Virus record (IMG/VR): IMGVR_UViG_3300046542_000227
Span: 124,001 to 188,000 of that record
Direction: 5' to 3' (one strand)
DNA length: 64,000 nt
Within the stretch, counting starts at the first letter, position 1. Each line of letters begins with the position of its first letter. This document shows, one piece after another, positions 4,670-62,969 of this stretch. The notes beneath the pieces are model-generated. The model saw only the letters and a program-made list of their open reading frames with translations. It was not told where the DNA came from and did no database searches. Both the position numbers and the translations under genes were made by a program.

Positions 4670-4744
4670 ATCCAGGCGAGGGGAAACCCTCGACCTGTTT
4701 TTCTTTTATGCCGCCTAGGAGGTGCATTGATCAAAAAGTATACT

Positions 4745-4935
4745 AGGGTGCCCCATGATGTGTTTAAGCCAGGCCTCTGTGGCTTTCTGGCTTTTATTCA
4801 GCTGTAAGACCCGGCCATTACTACGCCATCTTCGTGGTAGGCCATTCTAACCCTGCGTAAGCGGGACCTTTAGCTCAGTCCAGCGTTCGGCGGTGAGGAC
4901 CGCAAGGATACAATAAGACGCCCGTCAGAGCTAGT
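4745..4935 (+). ncRNA. Candidate structured non-coding RNA A
   Basis: ORF-free interval with nested stems (AAGCCAG/CTGGCTT, GGCC..CTAC/GTAG..GCC, CCC-GC-GTAA-GC-GGG, AGCTC/GAGCT) and GNRA/UUCG-type loops. Confidence 0.45.
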
Positions 4936-4946
4936 GAGATAAGTAC

Positions 4947-8057: not shown

Positions 8058-8668
8058 CCACCGTCGTACTTACACCAGACTTTATTTTGGCTGACTGCCG
8101 TGTGACCTGTAAGATCGCTGCGGTTGATGCGATGGGTAAGACCGTCCAGCTTGATTGCATCACCGACGAGTTCGGTAAGATCGGCGAGTGGCGTCAGTCC
8201 CTCGATGGCGATGAGTGCTACGGCTTCGTGTTGTTCGGTGAAGTTGAAACTGCACAGGCCTTGGCTAAGTACTTGGACACAGTCGGTCTGTCCAACCTTA
8301 AGGACAAGCTCGATGCATTGGGTGGTTTCAAGATCAAGCTGCCACAGGTAGCCACGGGCATTGCTTGGGTCACTGAGGCTAAGCGCATGATGTGGGTGAC
8401 CTTGGATCCTCAGGGTTATCAGATCCATGAAGCTGAGCCCGGTAAAGAATACGTTGCCTTAGGCAGCGGCGCTGCATTGTTCGACCAATACTACCAACGT
8501 CCTAAGGACATCATGTCGGCCTTCCTTTATGCAGCCAAGGAAGATCCGCAGTCGACCCATCAGGTCTATGACCGTTGGACGCAAGAAACAGCACACATCG
8601 TTCGTCATCGTATTCCAGATGGCGAAGTCCCTAAAGTACTTGAAGAGTTGTTAACCGGCGGGCTCTGA
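8054..8668 (+). CDS. Proteasome-beta/HslV-like Ntn peptidase
   Basis: N-terminal M-T-T nucleophile, ADCRVT (D17/R19-like), GKI, ALGSGA and EDPQS. Confidence 0.65.
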   Translation: MTTVVLTPDFILADCRVTCKIAAVDAMGKTVQLDCITDEFGKIGEWRQSLDGDECYGFVLFGEVETAQALAKYLDTVGLSNLKDKLDALGGFKIKLPQVATGIAWVTEAKRMMWVTLDPQGYQIHEAEPGKEYVALGSGAALFDQYYQRPKDIMSAFLYAAKEDPQSTHQVYDRWTQETAHIVRHRIPDGEVPKVLEELLTGGL

Positions 8669-9141
8669 TGTATTCGCAACTGATCGTGGTTGACTTTAGC
8701 AAGGTAAAGAAGCAGATCGACTTCTCTGGACTAACTGGGTTCACTACGGACACTGTGTCCTATTATCGAGACGATCTGTTTCCTGACTTCTCAGCGTATC
8801 TGTTTAACTACGAGCGCTGGGGTGAGCGACCACTATTTCAACTGGCTTTCATGTTTGAAGGACAGCCAGAACCTAACGGGGTTCTTATGAACTCGGTTGA
8901 GGTAAATGAAATCGTACTACGATCCGCTCTGCGTTACGCAGCGTGGGTTAAGGGTGAGCTGTCAGTAGTTACCCATAAAGGCAACCGTACCATATGTGGC
9001 TATGCCTCTACCGAGAAATACCCCGACCTTGGCAATACGTTGCAATGGTTAGTGGAACCAATCGCGGAGAAACAAGATGCGGAACCTAGCAGTGGAGAAG
9101 ATCCAGCGGAACCGGCGGGAGCGCCAGTTCTACCTTACTAA
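8668..9141 (+). CDS. Hypothetical protein
   Basis: 157 aa ORF, TGATG-coupled to upstream gene. Confidence 0.6.
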   Translation: MYSQLIVVDFSKVKKQIDFSGLTGFTTDTVSYYRDDLFPDFSAYLFNYERWGERPLFQLAFMFEGQPEPNGVLMNSVEVNEIVLRSALRYAAWVKGELSVVTHKGNRTICGYASTEKYPDLGNTLQWLVEPIAEKQDAEPSSGEDPAEPAGAPVLPY

Positions 9142-9208
9142 TGTCGGTGTGATTGTTGCCGGTGTTAGTTACGCTTTGTTCGAACTGTTCAAGCCACTCT
9201 TGCATTGA
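9077..9208 (+). CDS. Candidate 43-aa membrane microprotein (not in ORF track)
   Basis: GGAG RBS at 9066; MRNLAVEKIQRNRRERQFYLTNVGVIVAGVSYALFELFKPLLH: basic N-terminus plus one TM helix. Confidence 0.45.
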   Translation: MRNLAVEKIQRNRRERQFYLTNVGVIVAGVSYALFELFKPLLH

Positions 9209-9235
9209 AGGAAAGTTTTACACATTCTGTAATGG

Positions 9236-9477
9236 TATGTGAAACAGTCCTTGCATGCTACTCACATAGCTCTTTAAAACCCAGGCAACACCCCCAAGGT
9301 GGGCTTCGTCCCCATCATTAACCCCTATCGTACCAGCGTTTAGGGGCAGCTAAACCCGGAAGTGAAGTAGACCCTCGCAAGCAGGCAGCTGGCCAGCGTA
9401 GCGCGGTCGAACATGAAAGGCAATAGCTCTAGCATTAAGAAGTGCAGACCCCCGCCCTCCGGGGCGGGTCTATGCCC
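9236..9477 (+). ncRNA. Candidate structured non-coding RNA B
   Basis: ORF-free; starts at AATGGTATG late-promoter-like motif, ends in GC hairpin; stems TATGTGA/TCACATA, CCCCTA/TAGGGG, CAGCT/AGCTG and a GCAA tetraloop. Confidence 0.5.
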
Positions 9478-9529
9478 GTTCGAACATATTCAACGTCTAT
9501 ATCACTGAGTTGAATACCTACATCTACAG

Positions 9530-9940
9530 GTGGTCATCATGCATGCCCGTTGCACTACGTTGCAAGAAATGAAAGCCCATAAGTGTGAGCGTCCTACATG
9601 TCAGTTCGCTCCAATGTTTCAGGTGTTCGACGTGAACAGTCATGGACTGCACGAATCGATCTACCTGTGTAAAGACCATTATGCCGACTTGCAGCATGAA
9701 CAAACTGCAGCTCAGGCCAAACAGTATTGTGAGCTGTGCGGTAACCCAGACACAAAGTTCTATGACTCACCGAAGTTTGGTGATGCTAACCCCAACAAGA
9801 TCTACCAGGTTTGTGCTGGTTGCAAACAAGAGCAGGAGGATCTGACGCAGGCGGAGTTCGAAGCTCAAGAAGAAGAACCCGCACCCGACGAAGTCGATGA
9901 TCGTCCTAACATCGACCCTACTCCTTACGATGAGTTCTGA
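9530..9940 (+). CDS. Cys-rich putative zinc-finger protein with acidic tail
   Basis: CERPTC, CKDH, CELC, CAGC motifs; Glu/Asp/Pro-rich C-terminus; early promoter at 9497. Confidence 0.6.
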   Translation: MVIMHARCTTLQEMKAHKCERPTCQFAPMFQVFDVNSHGLHESIYLCKDHYADLQHEQTAAQAKQYCELCGNPDTKFYDSPKFGDANPNKIYQVCAGCKQEQEDLTQAEFEAQEEEPAPDEVDDRPNIDPTPYDEF

Positions 9941-42012: not shown

Positions 42013-42118
42013 AAACATACTGCCCTCCTCGATATGAGGAGGGCTTTATGCTGTCCACTGCATTTAGTCTGAGACCTATATCACTGAAGAGATAAACCAC
42101 CCAATCTAAGGAAGTGTT

Positions 42119-60883: not shown

Positions 60884-61094
60884 AAAAAGAATTACACGTC
60901 GTAGTGTATAGTATGTGAACTAGCATATGGTTCATCGCACCTTTGGTGTATGTTCCTATGCTGCCGACATTTAGGTCTTTTTACCTACCCCACAGAAAAG
61001 TGGAATTAAAAATACCTGAAGCCTATATCACGTAGAAGAATAACCGCAATCGGTTACGCTTACGTATATACCCAACCAAAAGGAAACAAGAGTC

Positions 61095-62969
61095 ATGGCA
61101 ATTCAAGACGAAGAGAATGGCGCACAAAACAACGGCCAGCAATCGGCTCCGGGCACCATGGGTACTCAGAACCCGTACAACGGCACTGCTGAACAGTCTC
61201 AGGCCCGCGCCACTCACCTCGGTGATGTGAACAGCCTGCTGGCTCGTGGCGGTAAAGCCGATAACACCGAAGGCCGCTCCGGCGAACTGCTGACCGCTCT
61301 GACCCTGAACGGTAAAGAAGCAGTTGCAGCTCAGAACCTGACCCCGGACTTCGAACTGGTTCGCTTCGATCGCGATCAACATCGCGTCGGCGTCGGTGCC
61401 ATCCTGGTACTGCGTGCGTACCGTAAAGGTGCCGATACCTACATCGCTGTTCGCCCACTGCTGGTCGACAACAAGCAGGTTTCGCTCAAGCCTCGCATCC
61501 TGACCATCGGTCAAGAGCGCCTGGAAATCCCTACCTACGTCGCCGACGTACTGTCCGACGAATACTGGAACCGTATCACTCGCCACGTGCAAGACCACGT
61601 TGCCAACCCGAAGGCGATCGTCGCCAACGCTGGCTACCTGGAAGTACCGAGCGACTTCGACGTGTCCGACAAGAACTCGGCCGACGTTACCAAGCTGTTG
61701 TCCGTATCGGTCAACCGCTGCGACGACGTGCTGGCTCGCGTTAACGGCGAAACGCCTTTCAACATCGCTGTCTTCAAAGCAGCGAACGAAGTGCTGACCG
61801 CCAAGCTGGACTTCTCCGGTACTCCGCGCACTGACCTGTTCGGCCAACCGATCCGTTCCGACATCCAGGTGTCCATGAACCGCAGCATCCGCGGCAACGC
61901 TGAAGCTGATCCGTTCTACGACGCTGACACCCAGTTCTCCTCGGTGAGCTGCTACGTCAACCTGGAATACGCACCGGCCAACGCCCCACAAGGCTACGCT
62001 CCGGCTGCCGTAATGGAAACTCAGCTGTTCACCCCGACCATCGTCATCACCGACGTACGTCAGGCCAGCTGGATCGGCGCCAACACGCCTGAGCTGTACT
62101 TCCTGGCTCTGTCCAACGCCTACCGCACTACCGCTGGTACTGCATGGGCCGGCAGCCTGCTGCCAGACGTTGCCAAGAAAGACGACCCACGCGACATCGG
62201 TGCTCTGACCTACCTGACCAAGGACGCGAAGAAGACCAAAACCAAAACCGATACCTTCACCCCGGCTCACTTCGGTGAACTGATGTTCATGCTGGTTCGT
62301 CCTAACCCGACGTTCCTGATCGACATCAACCCGGTCGGCGAAAACTCGGCAATCGAAAACGTCCTGCTGATGGCGGCCAGCGATGGTCCGAACCGTGAGC
62401 GCGCCGTAGCGATCCTGGTATCGAGCCTCAACAACCTGACCGCTGGCCACTTCAGCCAGATCTTCGACCACACCAAGCACCACTTGATCCGCATGTACGG
62501 CACCGACGTACACCGCGGCTACTACCTGGACGCACGCGAAGATCGTCACGATCTCCGTGACCTGGGCACGCTGGAAGCGCTGAACGCATCGGGTGGCAAC
62601 ATCCAAGAGTTCATCGCCTACTACCGTACCATGTGCGACCAAGCGATCCACCCGGAAATCCGCCTCAAGCAGCGCGTCGGTTACGAGCGTCAGTACCTGA
62701 GCCAGAACCTGGTGATCCGCGGCAAGTACCACCGTCTGGTCTGGACTCCTGAGTTCATCCTGGCGCTGGACAATGCGGTTAAAGCTGCAGGCGTATCCGT
62801 CGACGTGGAAAACGTGAGCACCGTTTACGGTTCTCAGCGCTTCACCGGCAACACTGCTGTTACTCAGTTCGCTGTGGCTCAACAAGCACAGTACGGCCTG
62901 GGTGCCAACGCAGGTCAGGGCGGCTACGGTCTCCCAGGCGGCGCCGGTGCTGGTACCATGATGTACTAA
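61095..62969 (+). CDS. chmA: Chimallin, phage nucleus shell protein (phiKZ gp54 / 201phi2-1 gp105-like)
   Basis: 624 aa, own early promoter and terminator, strongest codon bias in the window, directly upstream of the nvRNAP beta-prime gene; assignment mainly by size and synteny. Confidence 0.85.
   Translation: MAIQDEENGAQNNGQQSAPGTMGTQNPYNGTAEQSQARATHLGDVNSLLARGGKADNTEGRSGELLTALTLNGKEAVAAQNLTPDFELVRFDRDQHRVGVGAILVLRAYRKGADTYIAVRPLLVDNKQVSLKPRILTIGQERLEIPTYVADVLSDEYWNRITRHVQDHVANPKAIVANAGYLEVPSDFDVSDKNSADVTKLLSVSVNRCDDVLARVNGETPFNIAVFKAANEVLTAKLDFSGTPRTDLFGQPIRSDIQVSMNRSIRGNAEADPFYDADTQFSSVSCYVNLEYAPANAPQGYAPAAVMETQLFTPTIVITDVRQASWIGANTPELYFLALSNAYRTTAGTAWAGSLLPDVAKKDDPRDIGALTYLTKDAKKTKTKTDTFTPAHFGELMFMLVRPNPTFLIDINPVGENSAIENVLLMAASDGPNRERAVAILVSSLNNLTAGHFSQIFDHTKHHLIRMYGTDVHRGYYLDAREDRHDLRDLGTLEALNASGGNIQEFIAYYRTMCDQAIHPEIRLKQRVGYERQYLSQNLVIRGKYHRLVWTPEFILALDNAVKAAGVSVDVENVSTVYGSQRFTGNTAVTQFAVAQQAQYGLGANAGQGGYGLPGGAGAGTMMY

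What the first reader, a model, noticed from the sequence alone, without database searches (positions are those of the whole stretch)
9229..9477. Candidate novel structured ncRNA B (~240 nt) as a stand-alone late transcription unit
It has a late-promoter-like AATGGTATG at its 5' edge, a closing GC hairpin before the next early promoter (9497), and no ORF. It contains a 5' stem TATGTGA/TCACATA, several hairpins, a CAGCT/AGCTG multibranch with GCAA loop and a direct repeat ATAGCTCT (~9266, ~9423). Like RNA A, it has AGCT-closed multibranch elements and a CC(T)CGCAAG-type loop, so the two may form a family. Possible roles: virion-packaged RNA, RNA-binding-protein sponge or defence decoy.
Basis: partly seen in the sequence, partly recalled or inferred. 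Interest (0 to 1): 0.7.

Follow-up and report, generated by a model that had tools for sequence, protein, structure and literature searches.

The report
Conserved small RNA gene, jumbo phage
An apparently empty 320-base gap in a giant Pseudomonas phage holds a conserved, folded, non-coding RNA gene that uses the same special promoter as the phage's tRNA genes, but nobody has yet seen the transcript or knows its job.

Summary
The window is part of a 267-kb phiKZ-like jumbo phage related to Pseudomonas phage Noxifer. The flagged stretch is real and is best read as a stand-alone gene for a structured RNA of about 240 nt (window 9239 to about 9478, + strand).

- **Conservation:** the same unit sits in the same gene context in 13 distinct relatives.
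- **Structure:** three hairpins (P1, P2, P3) are kept through compensatory changes: 94% of cells paired, 16 of 18 pairs with double changes.
- **Linker:** a roughly 28-nt single-stranded stretch (GCUCUUUAAAACCCAGGCAACACCCC) is usually better conserved than the neighbouring gene.
- **Not coding:** frames shift between close relatives.
- **Promoter:** AAGTTYTAC-N7-GTAATRSTATR recurs in front of the phage tRNA genes in four genomes.
- **Terminator:** it belongs to the phage's own recurrent class.
- **Known families:** there is no Rfam or tRNA match, and each genome has one copy, so it is not related to "RNA A".
- **phiKZ and PS119XW:** both carry shorter look-alike units at the syntenic site.

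No transcript data exist and no target was found. The function is inferred: a trans-acting RNA working through the exposed linker.

The parts
9077..9208 (+). Conserved 43-aa mini-ORF with a basic N-terminus and a C-terminal hydrophobic helix. It lies immediately upstream and overlaps the end of ORF 8668-9141. It sets the true 5' limit of the non-coding gap.
   Evidence: Synonymous-type substitution pattern against Noxifer. Translations are conserved in L003, L007 and L008. Called as a 42-45 aa gene in L011, L015 and L019.
9213..9239 (+). Promoter: AAGTTTTAC (9213-9221), a 7-nt spacer, then GTAATGGTATG (9229-9239). The predicted start is G9239, by analogy with the phiKZ T-3 A-2 T-1 G+1 motif.
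   Evidence: Conserved in 13 orthologues. The same motif at the same spacing lies upstream of tRNA-Tyr/Asn in the own genome and upstream of tRNAs in Noxifer, G001 and G002. The start-site assignment is inferred from PMC7598289.
9239..9265 (+). P1, the 5'-terminal hairpin: GUGA 9239-9242 pairs with UCAC 9262-9265. It begins at the predicted +1.
   Evidence: All 4 pairs show compensatory changes and 92% of cells are paired in 13 sequences. The alignment was fitted by the covariance model.
9266..9297 (+). Single-stranded linker. The core GCUCUUUAAAACCCAGGCAACACCCC (9269-9294; C9295 follows as a fifth C) is the best-conserved part of the RNA. Its 5' motif YUCYUUA resembles the 16S anti-Shine-Dalgarno sequence.
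   Evidence: 83-86% identity where the flanking gene is 57-66% identical. Predicted unpaired probability 0.64 against 0.41 for the rest of the RNA. The resemblance to the 16S 3' end is from the analyst's own knowledge.
9298..9316 (+). P2 hairpin: GGUGGG 9298-9303 pairs with CCCAUC 9311-9316; the loop is CUUCGUC.
   Evidence: On a MAFFT-only alignment of 13 sequences, 92% of cells are paired and 5 of 6 pairs have double changes; slid controls give 33-59%. G-U pairs place the RNA on the + strand.
9322..9346 (+). P3 hairpin: CCCCUA 9322-9327 pairs with UAGGGG 9341-9346. An inner helix CGU 9329-9331 pairs with GCG 9336-9338; the loop is ACCA.
   Evidence: All 6 outer pairs show double changes and 94% of cells are paired.
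9347..9447 (+). Variable 3' domain. The closing stem AGCUA 9348-9352 pairs with UAGCU 9424-9428, and a hairpin GCAUU 9432-9436 pairs with AGUGC 9441-9445. Short relatives replace this domain with one small GNRA-type hairpin.
   Evidence: One compensatory event: AGCUA/UAGCU becomes AGGUA/UACCU in L009, and four of those five pairs (AGGU/ACCU) hold in L003. This is weak, since it rests on four close sequences.
9451..9478 (+). Terminator: CCCGCCC 9451-9457, loop UCCG, GGGCGGG 9462-9468, followed by the tail UCUAUGCCCG.
   Evidence: Conserved in all orthologues. A hairpin followed by YTATGYCYG recurs across the genome, often in both directions. L016 and L017 carry two or three such terminators in tandem.
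9494..9516 (+). Early-type promoter motif CGTCTATATCAC-N6-TGAAT. It serves the downstream ORF and separates the RNA unit from that ORF.
   Evidence: 13 exact CTATATCAC copies in the genome, all on the + strand and 10 in gaps, against about 3.5 expected. Conserved in orthologues.
9530..9940 (+). Downstream ORF of 133-136 aa, rich in cysteine pairs, with no family match. It is the neighbouring gene, not part of the RNA.

Best explanation
Window 9239 to about 9478 (+ strand) is a gene for a structured, non-coding small RNA of about 240 nt. It belongs to a family so far found only in Noxifer-like jumbo phages, probably with shortened relatives in phiKZ-type phages.

Transcription (inferred): a phage-encoded multisubunit RNA polymerase starts at a dedicated promoter, AAGTTYTAC-N7-GTAATRSTATR, which the phage also uses for its tRNA genes. 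The transcript begins with a 5'-terminal hairpin (P1). It ends at a phage-type hairpin terminator and is insulated from the next gene, which has its own early-type promoter.

Anatomy (shown by comparison): P1, then a roughly 28-nt conserved single-stranded pyrimidine/A-rich linker, then hairpins P2 and P3, then a fast-evolving 3' domain.

Mechanism (inferred): the RNA acts in trans. The exposed linker is the working surface. It could pair with purine-rich, Shine-Dalgarno-like stretches of mRNAs, or it could bind a protein. The hairpins would provide stability and presentation.

Estimated probabilities:
- A genuine functional structured RNA element on the + strand: about 0.85.
- An independently transcribed stable RNA: about 0.7.
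- Acting through the linker in trans: about 0.4.
- Specifically by anti-Shine-Dalgarno-like pairing: about 0.15.
For: - **Orthologues:** the unit is in the same gene context in 13 distinct phage genomes or contigs.
- **Model recovery:** covariance model R1, built from 4 close sequences, recovers distant orthologues. Model R2 recovers the held-out L019 (E = 4e-5) and L016 (E = 0.05).
- **Covariation:** 94% of cells paired and 16 of 18 pairs with double changes; slid controls give 39-46% paired and 2-8 pairs. P2 gives the same result on a structure-blind alignment.
- **Strand:** G-U pairs fit only the + strand.
- **Not coding:** a 2-nt indel between the window and L007 shifts the frame across the most conserved block, and the Noxifer clade has no ATG.
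- **Linker:** it is better conserved than the flanking gene in 11 of 12 comparisons. It is predicted to be unpaired more often than the rest of the RNA (0.64 against 0.41).
- **Promoter:** it is shared with the tRNA genes. In the own genome it lies at 77,128 upstream of tRNA-Tyr/Asn. In three relatives the pattern gives 7 hits against 0 for the control: 4 precede tRNAs, 2 are orthologues of this RNA and 1 precedes another ORF-free unit.
- **Polymerase:** the phage encodes beta and beta' fragments of a multisubunit RNA polymerase.
- **Terminator:** its class recurs genome-wide, and tandem terminators occur in L016 and L017.
Against: - No transcript has been observed. The only runs holding related sequence give thin, even coverage of a relative about 85% identical, over coding and non-coding parts alike.
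- Folding energy is not better than shuffles.
- No target was found. Duplex scores against all phage translation starts equal those of shuffled linkers. There are no complementary 10-12-mers beyond chance.
- Anti-Shine-Dalgarno-like pairing is only mildly above shuffled 8-mers: 29% of starts against a shuffled mean of 17% and maximum of 38%.
- The Noxifer clade has TATA rather than TATG at the start site.
- No terminator separates the upstream mini-ORF from the RNA, so read-through transcripts may also cover it.
- The covariation counts for P1 and P3 come from model-fitted alignments.
Confidence: 0.6

Rival explanations
1. It is a cis-acting 5' leader or attenuator. The structured region and its terminator would control how much transcription from upstream reads into the downstream genes. 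The short RNA would then be a by-product of premature termination, like the 5'UTR-derived short RNAs of phiKZ and 201phi2-1.
For: - In phiKZ the syntenic short unit sits directly in front of the PHIKZ288 ribosome-binding site with no promoter in between.
- Short RNAs made by conditional termination in 5'UTRs are documented in phiKZ and 201phi2-1 (PMC10914365, PMC11512511).
Against: - In the window and all Noxifer-like relatives, an early-type promoter lies between the terminator and the next ORF.
- L016 and L017 carry two or three tandem terminators.
- The downstream gene differs between clades: L015 has a 64-aa gene.
- No Rfam riboswitch or leader matches.
Confidence: 0.15
2. It is the structured 3' end (3'UTR) of the upstream operon. 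It would be made by read-through and possibly processing, and would mainly stabilise that mRNA rather than being a gene of its own.
For: - No terminator lies between the mini-ORF (9077-9208) and the RNA.
- In distant relatives the promoter motif overlaps the mini-ORF stop codon.
- The RNA is always adjacent to the same upstream genes.
Against: - The promoter motif is conserved at a fixed distance from P1 and is the same one that precedes the tRNA genes.
- P1 starts exactly at the predicted +1 in every clade.
- A 28-nt single-stranded block conserved above coding level is not expected of a mere stabiliser.
Confidence: 0.1
3. It is a replication-origin primer transcript. A promoter-driven structured RNA would form a hybrid with an adjacent AT-rich stretch and prime DNA synthesis, as at T4 oriF/oriG or with ColE1 RNA II.
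For: - The locus lies a few genes downstream of the NAD-dependent DNA ligase.
- It consists of a promoter followed by an A/T-rich conserved block.
- The comparison with T4 and ColE1 is from the analyst's own knowledge.
Against: - GC skew shows no inflection near genome position 133 kb; the skew follows gene orientation.
- The transcript ends at a strong terminator.
- G-U-containing helices point to selection on the free RNA fold.
Confidence: 0.04
4. It is the RNA partner of the adjacent 43-aa membrane mini-protein, in a type I toxin-antitoxin-like or holin-regulating pair.
For: The mini-ORF and the RNA are adjacent in every Noxifer-like relative.
Against: - Both are on the same strand and do not overlap.
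- There is no complementarity to the mini-ORF mRNA beyond shuffles.
- PS119XW has a look-alike RNA and no comparable mini-ORF in its gap. In phiKZ the small annotated ORF PHIKZ287.1 is only the tail of the 157-aa gene homologue.
Confidence: 0.04

Closest known systems
Short intergenic and 5'UTR-derived RNAs of jumbo phages phiKZ and 201phi2-1, found by ONT-cappable-seq (PMC10914365, PMC11512511)
   Same: - Same phage group, with multisubunit RNA polymerases.
- A promoter followed within 250 nt by a terminator, with no ORF and a predicted structure.
- Function unknown.
- One of them (201phi2-1 sRNA005 / the phiKZ gp182 leader) is likewise conserved by position across genera.
   Different: - Those RNAs were seen as transcripts, and two were confirmed by Northern blot. 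This one has not been seen.
- None is reported at the PHIKZ287.1/288 locus in the text I could read; the supplementary tables were not available.
- This family has covariation support over 13 genomes and a promoter shared with the tRNA genes.
Phage T4 stable RNAs C and D (species 1 and 2 RNAs) encoded with the tRNA cluster (from the analyst's own knowledge, not checked here)
   Same: Small stable non-coding phage RNAs of unknown function, expressed together with the phage tRNAs.
   Different: - The T4 RNAs lie inside the tRNA operon and are cut out of a common precursor.
- This RNA lies about 56 kb from the tRNA genes and shares only the promoter type.
- No sequence relationship was tested.
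Bacterial trans-acting base-pairing sRNAs with C/U-rich seeds that mask Shine-Dalgarno sequences (from the analyst's own knowledge)
   Same: A conserved, exposed pyrimidine-rich stretch next to stable hairpins, a 5' stem-loop, and a terminator hairpin at the 3' end.
   Different: - There is no U-tail after the terminator, so a canonical Hfq 3' binding site is missing.
- The conserved block is much longer than a usual seed.
- No target was found.
Riboswitch or attenuator leaders
   Same: A structured region followed by a terminator hairpin upstream of genes.
   Different: - A separate promoter lies between the terminator and the gene.
- Some relatives have tandem terminators.
- There is no match to any Rfam family.

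Membership tests
Any Rfam 15 family, including tRNA, tmRNA, SRP, 6S, ribozymes and riboswitches | A covariance-model score at or above the family's gathering threshold | tested here: not met
   No match at gathering threshold in the whole window. In the permissive scan of 9100-9600 the best hits have E = 0.8-8 and lie far below threshold. ARAGORN finds no tRNA or tmRNA.
phiKZ-type late promoter of the non-virion RNA polymerase | T-3 A-2 T-1 G+1 overlapping the start site, with all four bases required in vitro (PMC7598289) | tested here: inconclusive
   TATG is present at 9236-9239 and in 10 of 13 orthologues. The Noxifer clade (L001, L008, L010) has TATA.
phiKZ-type late promoter of the non-virion RNA polymerase | Transcription late in infection by the phage non-virion polymerase | not testable with these tools
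   No RNA data exist for this phage or for Noxifer. The phage does encode polymerase beta and beta' fragments.
Stable-RNA (tRNA-type) promoter class of Noxifer-like phages, defined here | AAGTTYTAC-N7-GTAATRSTATR directly upstream of an RNA gene that begins with a hairpin | tested here: met
   The motif precedes this RNA, tRNA-Tyr/Asn and a third ORF-free unit in the own genome. In three relatives it gives 7 hits against 0 for the control, and 4 of them precede tRNAs.
Jumbo-phage short non-coding transcription units (phiKZ / 201phi2-1 kind) | A promoter and a terminator less than about 250 nt apart with no conserved ORF | tested here: met
   The promoter ends at 9239 and the terminator at 9468-9478. 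Frames are not conserved between relatives.
Jumbo-phage short non-coding transcription units (phiKZ / 201phi2-1 kind) | An abundant short primary transcript observed | not testable with these tools
   No usable RNA-seq data. The supplementary tables of the phiKZ study are not held.
Hfq-dependent trans-acting sRNA | An intrinsic terminator ending in a run of U | tested here: not met
   The hairpin is followed by UCUAUGCCCG, with no U run.
Hfq-dependent trans-acting sRNA | A conserved single-stranded seed complementary to target mRNAs | tested here: inconclusive
   The exposed conserved linker is present. No phage target scores above shuffles. The host genome was not searchable.
Riboswitch or transcription attenuator | The structured leader is contiguous with the regulated ORF, which depends on read-through | tested here: not met
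   An early-type promoter at 9494-9505 lies between the terminator and the ORF. Relatives have tandem terminators.
   Models R1 and R2, searched over the whole 267-kb genome at E <= 10, find only 133,236-133,349.
Type I toxin-antitoxin RNA | Complementarity to the mRNA of the adjacent small hydrophobic protein | tested here: not met
   The duplex energy is no better than for shuffled targets. Both elements are on the same strand and do not overlap.

The most novel reading that the evidence does not exclude
RNA B would be the full-length form of an RNA family shared by nucleus-forming phiKZ-like phages, with minimal versions at phiKZ 262,670-262,760 and PS119XW 283,189 to about 283,370. It would belong to a phage 'stable RNA regulon', co-transcribed with the phage tRNAs from a dedicated promoter. 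Its invariant YUCYUUA-containing linker would mimic the 3' end of 16S rRNA. By occupying Shine-Dalgarno-like sequences, or a factor that reads them, it would re-programme translation in mid to late infection.
Probability: 0.1. Interest if true: 0.8.

Novelty: new member of a known kind. Interest (0 to 1): 0.55.

Why it matters
Jumbo phages of the phiKZ type transcribe their genomes with their own polymerases, and what defines their middle and late promoters is still unclear. Short non-coding transcripts have been seen in phiKZ and 201phi2-1, but none has a function or a solid structural model.

This locus adds two things. The first is an RNA family with real covariation support, conserved across relatives whose flanking protein is only 45-66% identical to the window's. 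The second is a long, specific promoter motif shared by this RNA and the phage tRNA genes. That motif is a concrete handle on promoter recognition by the phage polymerase and on a possible stable-RNA regulon.

Look-alike units exist in phiKZ, where genetics, Cas13 knock-down and transcript maps are available, so the question can be tested directly.

Tried and rejected
1. **Rfam and ARAGORN:** nothing found.
2. **Folding energy against shuffles:** not significant on either strand.
3. **RNAalifold on a raw MAFFT alignment with flanks:** it paired promoter motifs with each other and was not used.
4. **Pattern scan of genome contigs for the linker:** at least 120 hits in unrelated bacteria, about the number chance predicts. 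These loci were not searched with the model. The 13 extra viral contigs pattern hits (L022-L029, L031-L035) were searched with model R1 and rejected.
5. **Coding hypothesis:** rejected by frame shifts between close relatives.
6. **Target search in the phage:** duplex scan of all translation starts, exact complementary words, the mini-ORF mRNA. None scored above controls. The downstream translation start was marginal (5 of 200 shuffles did as well). I traced it by eye to a 6-bp GCAUGC palindrome that is absent from L003, and discarded it.
7. **Anti-Shine-Dalgarno test:** 29% of starts against 8% of internal sites, but shuffled 8-mers average 17%, so the result is inconclusive.
8. **GC skew for an origin:** no signal.
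9. **Expression:** the only 'metatranscriptomic' runs holding related sequence look like DNA-level coverage of a relative.
10. **Neighbouring proteins:** no informative Pfam or PHROG matches.
11. **phiKZ and PS119XW units:** neither model R1 (filters off) nor R2 (default filters) detects them. Their kinship rests on synteny and on a local alignment of the linker (z = 6.6).

Full report
**Where the window lies.** The window is positions 124,001-188,000 of a 267,320-bp virus record with terminal repeats. Its closest isolate is Pseudomonas phage Noxifer, a 278-kb jumbo phage of P. fluorescens SBW25. The genome encodes fragments of the beta and beta' subunits of a multisubunit RNA polymerase. It therefore belongs to the phiKZ-like phages that transcribe with their own enzymes.

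**Checking the observation.** The non-coding gap is a little smaller than it looks. A 43-aa ORF at 9077-9208, with a basic N-terminus and a hydrophobic tail, overlaps the end of ORF 8668-9141. It is conserved at the protein level in relatives and is called as a gene in several of them. The gap proper runs from 9209 to the start of the next ORF at 9530/9539. Folding energy is not informative: z = -1.2 on the + strand and +0.8 on the - strand. There is no Rfam family and no tRNA.

**Relatives.** I collected the syntenic locus from 13 distinct genomes or contigs, using the flanking 157-aa protein. The gene order is DNA ligase, some small genes, the 157-aa gene, the mini-ORF, a gap, then the next gene. 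The flanking protein ranges from 90% down to 45% identity to the window's. All carry the same unit in the gap. In order, it consists of:
- a promoter-like block;
- a hairpin starting at the predicted first transcribed base;
- a conserved unpaired stretch;
- two hairpins;
- a variable part;
- a GC hairpin followed by YTATGYCCG.

**Structure.** P2 aligns without any structural guidance. On a plain MAFFT alignment of 13 sequences, 92% of cells pair and 5 of 6 pairs carry changes on both sides. When the partner columns are slid, pairing falls to 33-59%.

A covariance model built from the four closest sequences found the distant orthologues. A second model built from those hits found two sequences that had not been used to build it: L019 at E = 4e-5 and L016 at E = 0.05. 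On the resulting 13-sequence alignment:
- 94% of cells pair;
- 16 of 18 pairs show double changes;
- no shuffle reaches the observed covariation score;
- slid controls give 39-46% paired and 2-8 pairs.

For P1 and P3 this alignment is fitted to the model, which favours the structure. The size of the effect and the P2 control make an artefact unlikely. Many pairs are G-U, which would be C-A on the other strand, so the RNA is read from the + strand.

The helices in window coordinates are:
- P1: 9239-9242 with 9262-9265.
- P2: 9298-9303 with 9311-9316.
- P3: 9322-9327 with 9341-9346, plus an inner helix 9329-9331 with 9336-9338.

**It is not a protein gene.** The ATG inside GTAATGGTATG opens a 29-codon frame in the window. 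The 90%-related L007 has a 2-nt deletion just before the most conserved block, so that block is read in another frame. The Noxifer clade has no ATG there at all.

**The linker.** The stretch between P1 and P2 (9266-9297, core GCUCUUUAAAACCCAGGCAACACCCC) is the best-conserved part. It is 83-86% identical in relatives whose flanking gene is only 57-66% identical at the DNA level. In all 13 orthologues it is predicted to be unpaired more often than the rest of the RNA, with a mean of 0.64 against 0.41. Its first bases (GCUCUUUA; GCUCCUUA in L008 and L010; GCCUUA in L016) resemble the 3' end of 16S rRNA, CCUCCUUA. That resemblance is from my own knowledge.

**The 3' domain** (9347-9447) evolves fast. 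In the window's clade it is closed by AGCUA 9348-9352 pairing with UAGCU 9424-9428. This covaries once, becoming AGGUA/UACCU in L009, with four of those five pairs (AGGU/ACCU) holding in L003. The second ATAGCTCT 'repeat' copy is simply the 3' strand of this stem, and it is not a repeat in L003 or L009. Short relatives (L016, L017, L019, L021; 130-145 nt) replace the whole domain with one small hairpin.

**Promoter.** Across the orthologues, TAC-N7-GTAAT-N2-TAT-R is conserved, and P1 always begins at the R. Scanning the own genome with a weight matrix from the orthologues gave one further strong hit, at 77,128. It reads AAGTTCTAC-N7-GTAATACTATA and lies about 20 nt upstream of tRNA-Tyr and tRNA-Asn. 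A third copy at 73,728 precedes an ORF-free stretch of about 100 nt that ends in a terminator.

In Noxifer and two metagenomic relatives, the pattern TACN7GTAWTRSTATR occurs 7 times, and the reversed control pattern occurs 0 times:
- 4 hits precede tRNA genes;
- 2 are orthologues of this RNA;
- 1 precedes a 330-nt ORF-free unit with no Rfam match.

So this RNA shares a specific promoter with the phage's stable RNAs. That is the best available argument that it is transcribed as its own unit.

The match to the phiKZ late motif T-3 A-2 T-1 G+1 (PMC7598289) holds in most orthologues but not in the Noxifer clade, which has TATA. In 201phi2-1 a tRNA is driven by a middle promoter (PMC11512511). 'Late' is therefore not established.

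**Terminator and insulation.** The hairpin at 9451-9468 with its tail UCUAUGCCCG belongs to a class that recurs throughout the genome, often as bidirectional sites of the form CGGCATAAA-hairpin-CTTTATGYC. It is followed by CGTCTATATCAC. The core of that motif, CTATATCAC, occurs 13 times in the genome, always on the + strand and mostly in gaps in front of genes, against about 3.5 expected. This fits the conserved AT-rich early promoter element described for these phages (PMC7598289). L016 and L017 have two or three terminators in a row after the RNA. The unit is thus insulated from the downstream gene.

The flanking protein has weak homologues in phiKZ-type and PS119XW-type phages. Downstream of those homologues there are short units with a TATG start, GCUCUUUUA, one or more hairpins and a terminator:
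- phiKZ: about 262,670-262,760.
- PS119XW: about 283,189-283,370, with hairpins like P2, P3 and P4.

The PS119XW linker aligns to that of L021 with z = 6.6. The covariance models do not reach these units, so I treat their kinship as probable, not shown. In phiKZ no promoter lies between the terminator and PHIKZ288. There the unit looks like the 5'UTR-derived short RNAs described by Putzeys et al. (PMC10914365).

**How it might work.** What is shown is a conserved fold, a conserved exposed linker, a promoter shared with the tRNAs, and a phage-type terminator. What is inferred is that the RNA is made as a stable, independent molecule and acts through the linker.

I looked for targets and found none:
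- Duplex scores against all phage translation starts equal those of shuffled linkers.
- Complementary words are not enriched.
- Neither the mini-ORF mRNA nor the downstream start gives a conserved interaction.

The anti-Shine-Dalgarno-like motif can pair with 29% of phage translation starts against 8% of internal sites. Shuffled versions of the 8-mer reach 17% on average. The idea stays open but unsupported. Host targets could not be searched. A protein-binding role is equally possible.

**Expression.** No RNA data exist for this phage. Four soil runs labelled metatranscriptomic hold fragments of a relative about 85% identical, at depth 2-4, over coding and non-coding parts alike. This shows presence, not a discrete transcript.

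**Comparison with known systems.**
- The closest known kind is the set of short non-coding transcription units mapped in phiKZ and 201phi2-1 (PMC10914365, PMC11512511).
- From memory, the stable RNAs C and D that T4 expresses with its tRNAs are also comparable.
- It is not a member of any Rfam family.
- It lacks the U-tail of Hfq-type sRNAs.
- It does not meet the contiguity expected of a riboswitch or attenuator in this phage group.

**Verdict.** This is a real, conserved, structured non-coding RNA gene: a new family within a known kind. Its promoter link to the tRNA genes is interesting. Its function is unknown and no transcript evidence exists yet. Interest is 0.55.

Noticed in passing
window 9077-9208 (+): A conserved 43-aa ORF (MRNLAVEKIQRNRRERQFYLTNVGVIVAGVSYALFELFKPLLH) with a basic head and a hydrophobic tail. 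It overlaps the 3' end of ORF 8668-9141 in another frame. It is not annotated in Noxifer, but it is called in several metagenomic relatives.
   Followed up: partly
window 1503, 9470 and 52933; about 42020-42055; genome-wide: A phage-specific terminator class: a GC hairpin followed by YTATGYCYG rather than a U run. It is often symmetrical (CGGCATAAA-hairpin-CTTTATGYC) and so probably works in both directions. The tail contains TATG, the phiKZ late start motif, so some of these sites might double as start sites.
   Followed up: partly
window 5310, 9505, 42084, 48037 and 61031 (motif ends): CTATATCAC, often followed about 6 nt later by TGAAT, occurs 13 times in the genome. All copies are on the + strand and most lie in gaps upstream of genes. 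It is probably the early (virion polymerase) promoter element of this phage.
   Followed up: partly
window 60893-61010 (+): TTACAC-N7-TGTATAGTATGTGAAC resembles the RNA B promoter. It is followed by about 100 nt without an ORF, containing hairpins (UGAAC...GUUCA, GCACC...GGUGU, CCAC...GUGG), and then by an early-type CCTATATCAC. This is a possible further small RNA or leader upstream of the 624-aa ORF at 61095.
   Followed up: no
window 4670-4946 (+): A 277-nt gap with GC hairpins, CGCAAG/GCGUAAGC-type loops and AGCT-flanked stems. The RNA B covariance models do not detect it.
   Followed up: partly
own genome 73,700-73,830 (outside the window; L166 701-831): AAGTTCTAC-N7-GTATTGGTATGTGAAA is the same promoter type as RNA B. 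It is followed by about 70 nt and a bidirectional terminator, so this is a candidate small RNA.
   Followed up: no
own genome 77,128-77,480 (L166 4129-4481): The same promoter drives tRNA-Tyr and tRNA-Asn. Downstream of these tRNAs lies a further structured ORF-free stretch (GCCGGCUA...UAGCCGGC, closing several hairpins) ahead of a terminator. tRNA-Gln lies at 75,110.
   Followed up: partly
L162 1501-1860 (relative G001, 177,380-177,740): The same promoter is followed by an ORF-free stretch of about 330 nt ending in a phage-type terminator, directly upstream of the tRNA-Asn promoter. Rfam gives no match at E <= 0.01. This is another unknown RNA of the same regulon.
   Followed up: partly
L157 2941-3034 (phiKZ 262,667-262,760) and L158 2944-3129 (PS119XW 283,186-283,371): Short TATG...GCUCUUUUA...hairpin...terminator units at the syntenic position. 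The PS119XW unit has P2-, P3- and P4-like hairpins. The annotated PHIKZ287.1 is only the C-terminal part of the unannotated homologue of the 157-aa gene.
   Followed up: partly
L016 4451-5438 and L017 3865-5067: In one distant relative (L016) the nearby thymidylate synthase gene carries an intein (Hint and intein-splicing domains). In the other (L017) it does not.
   Followed up: no
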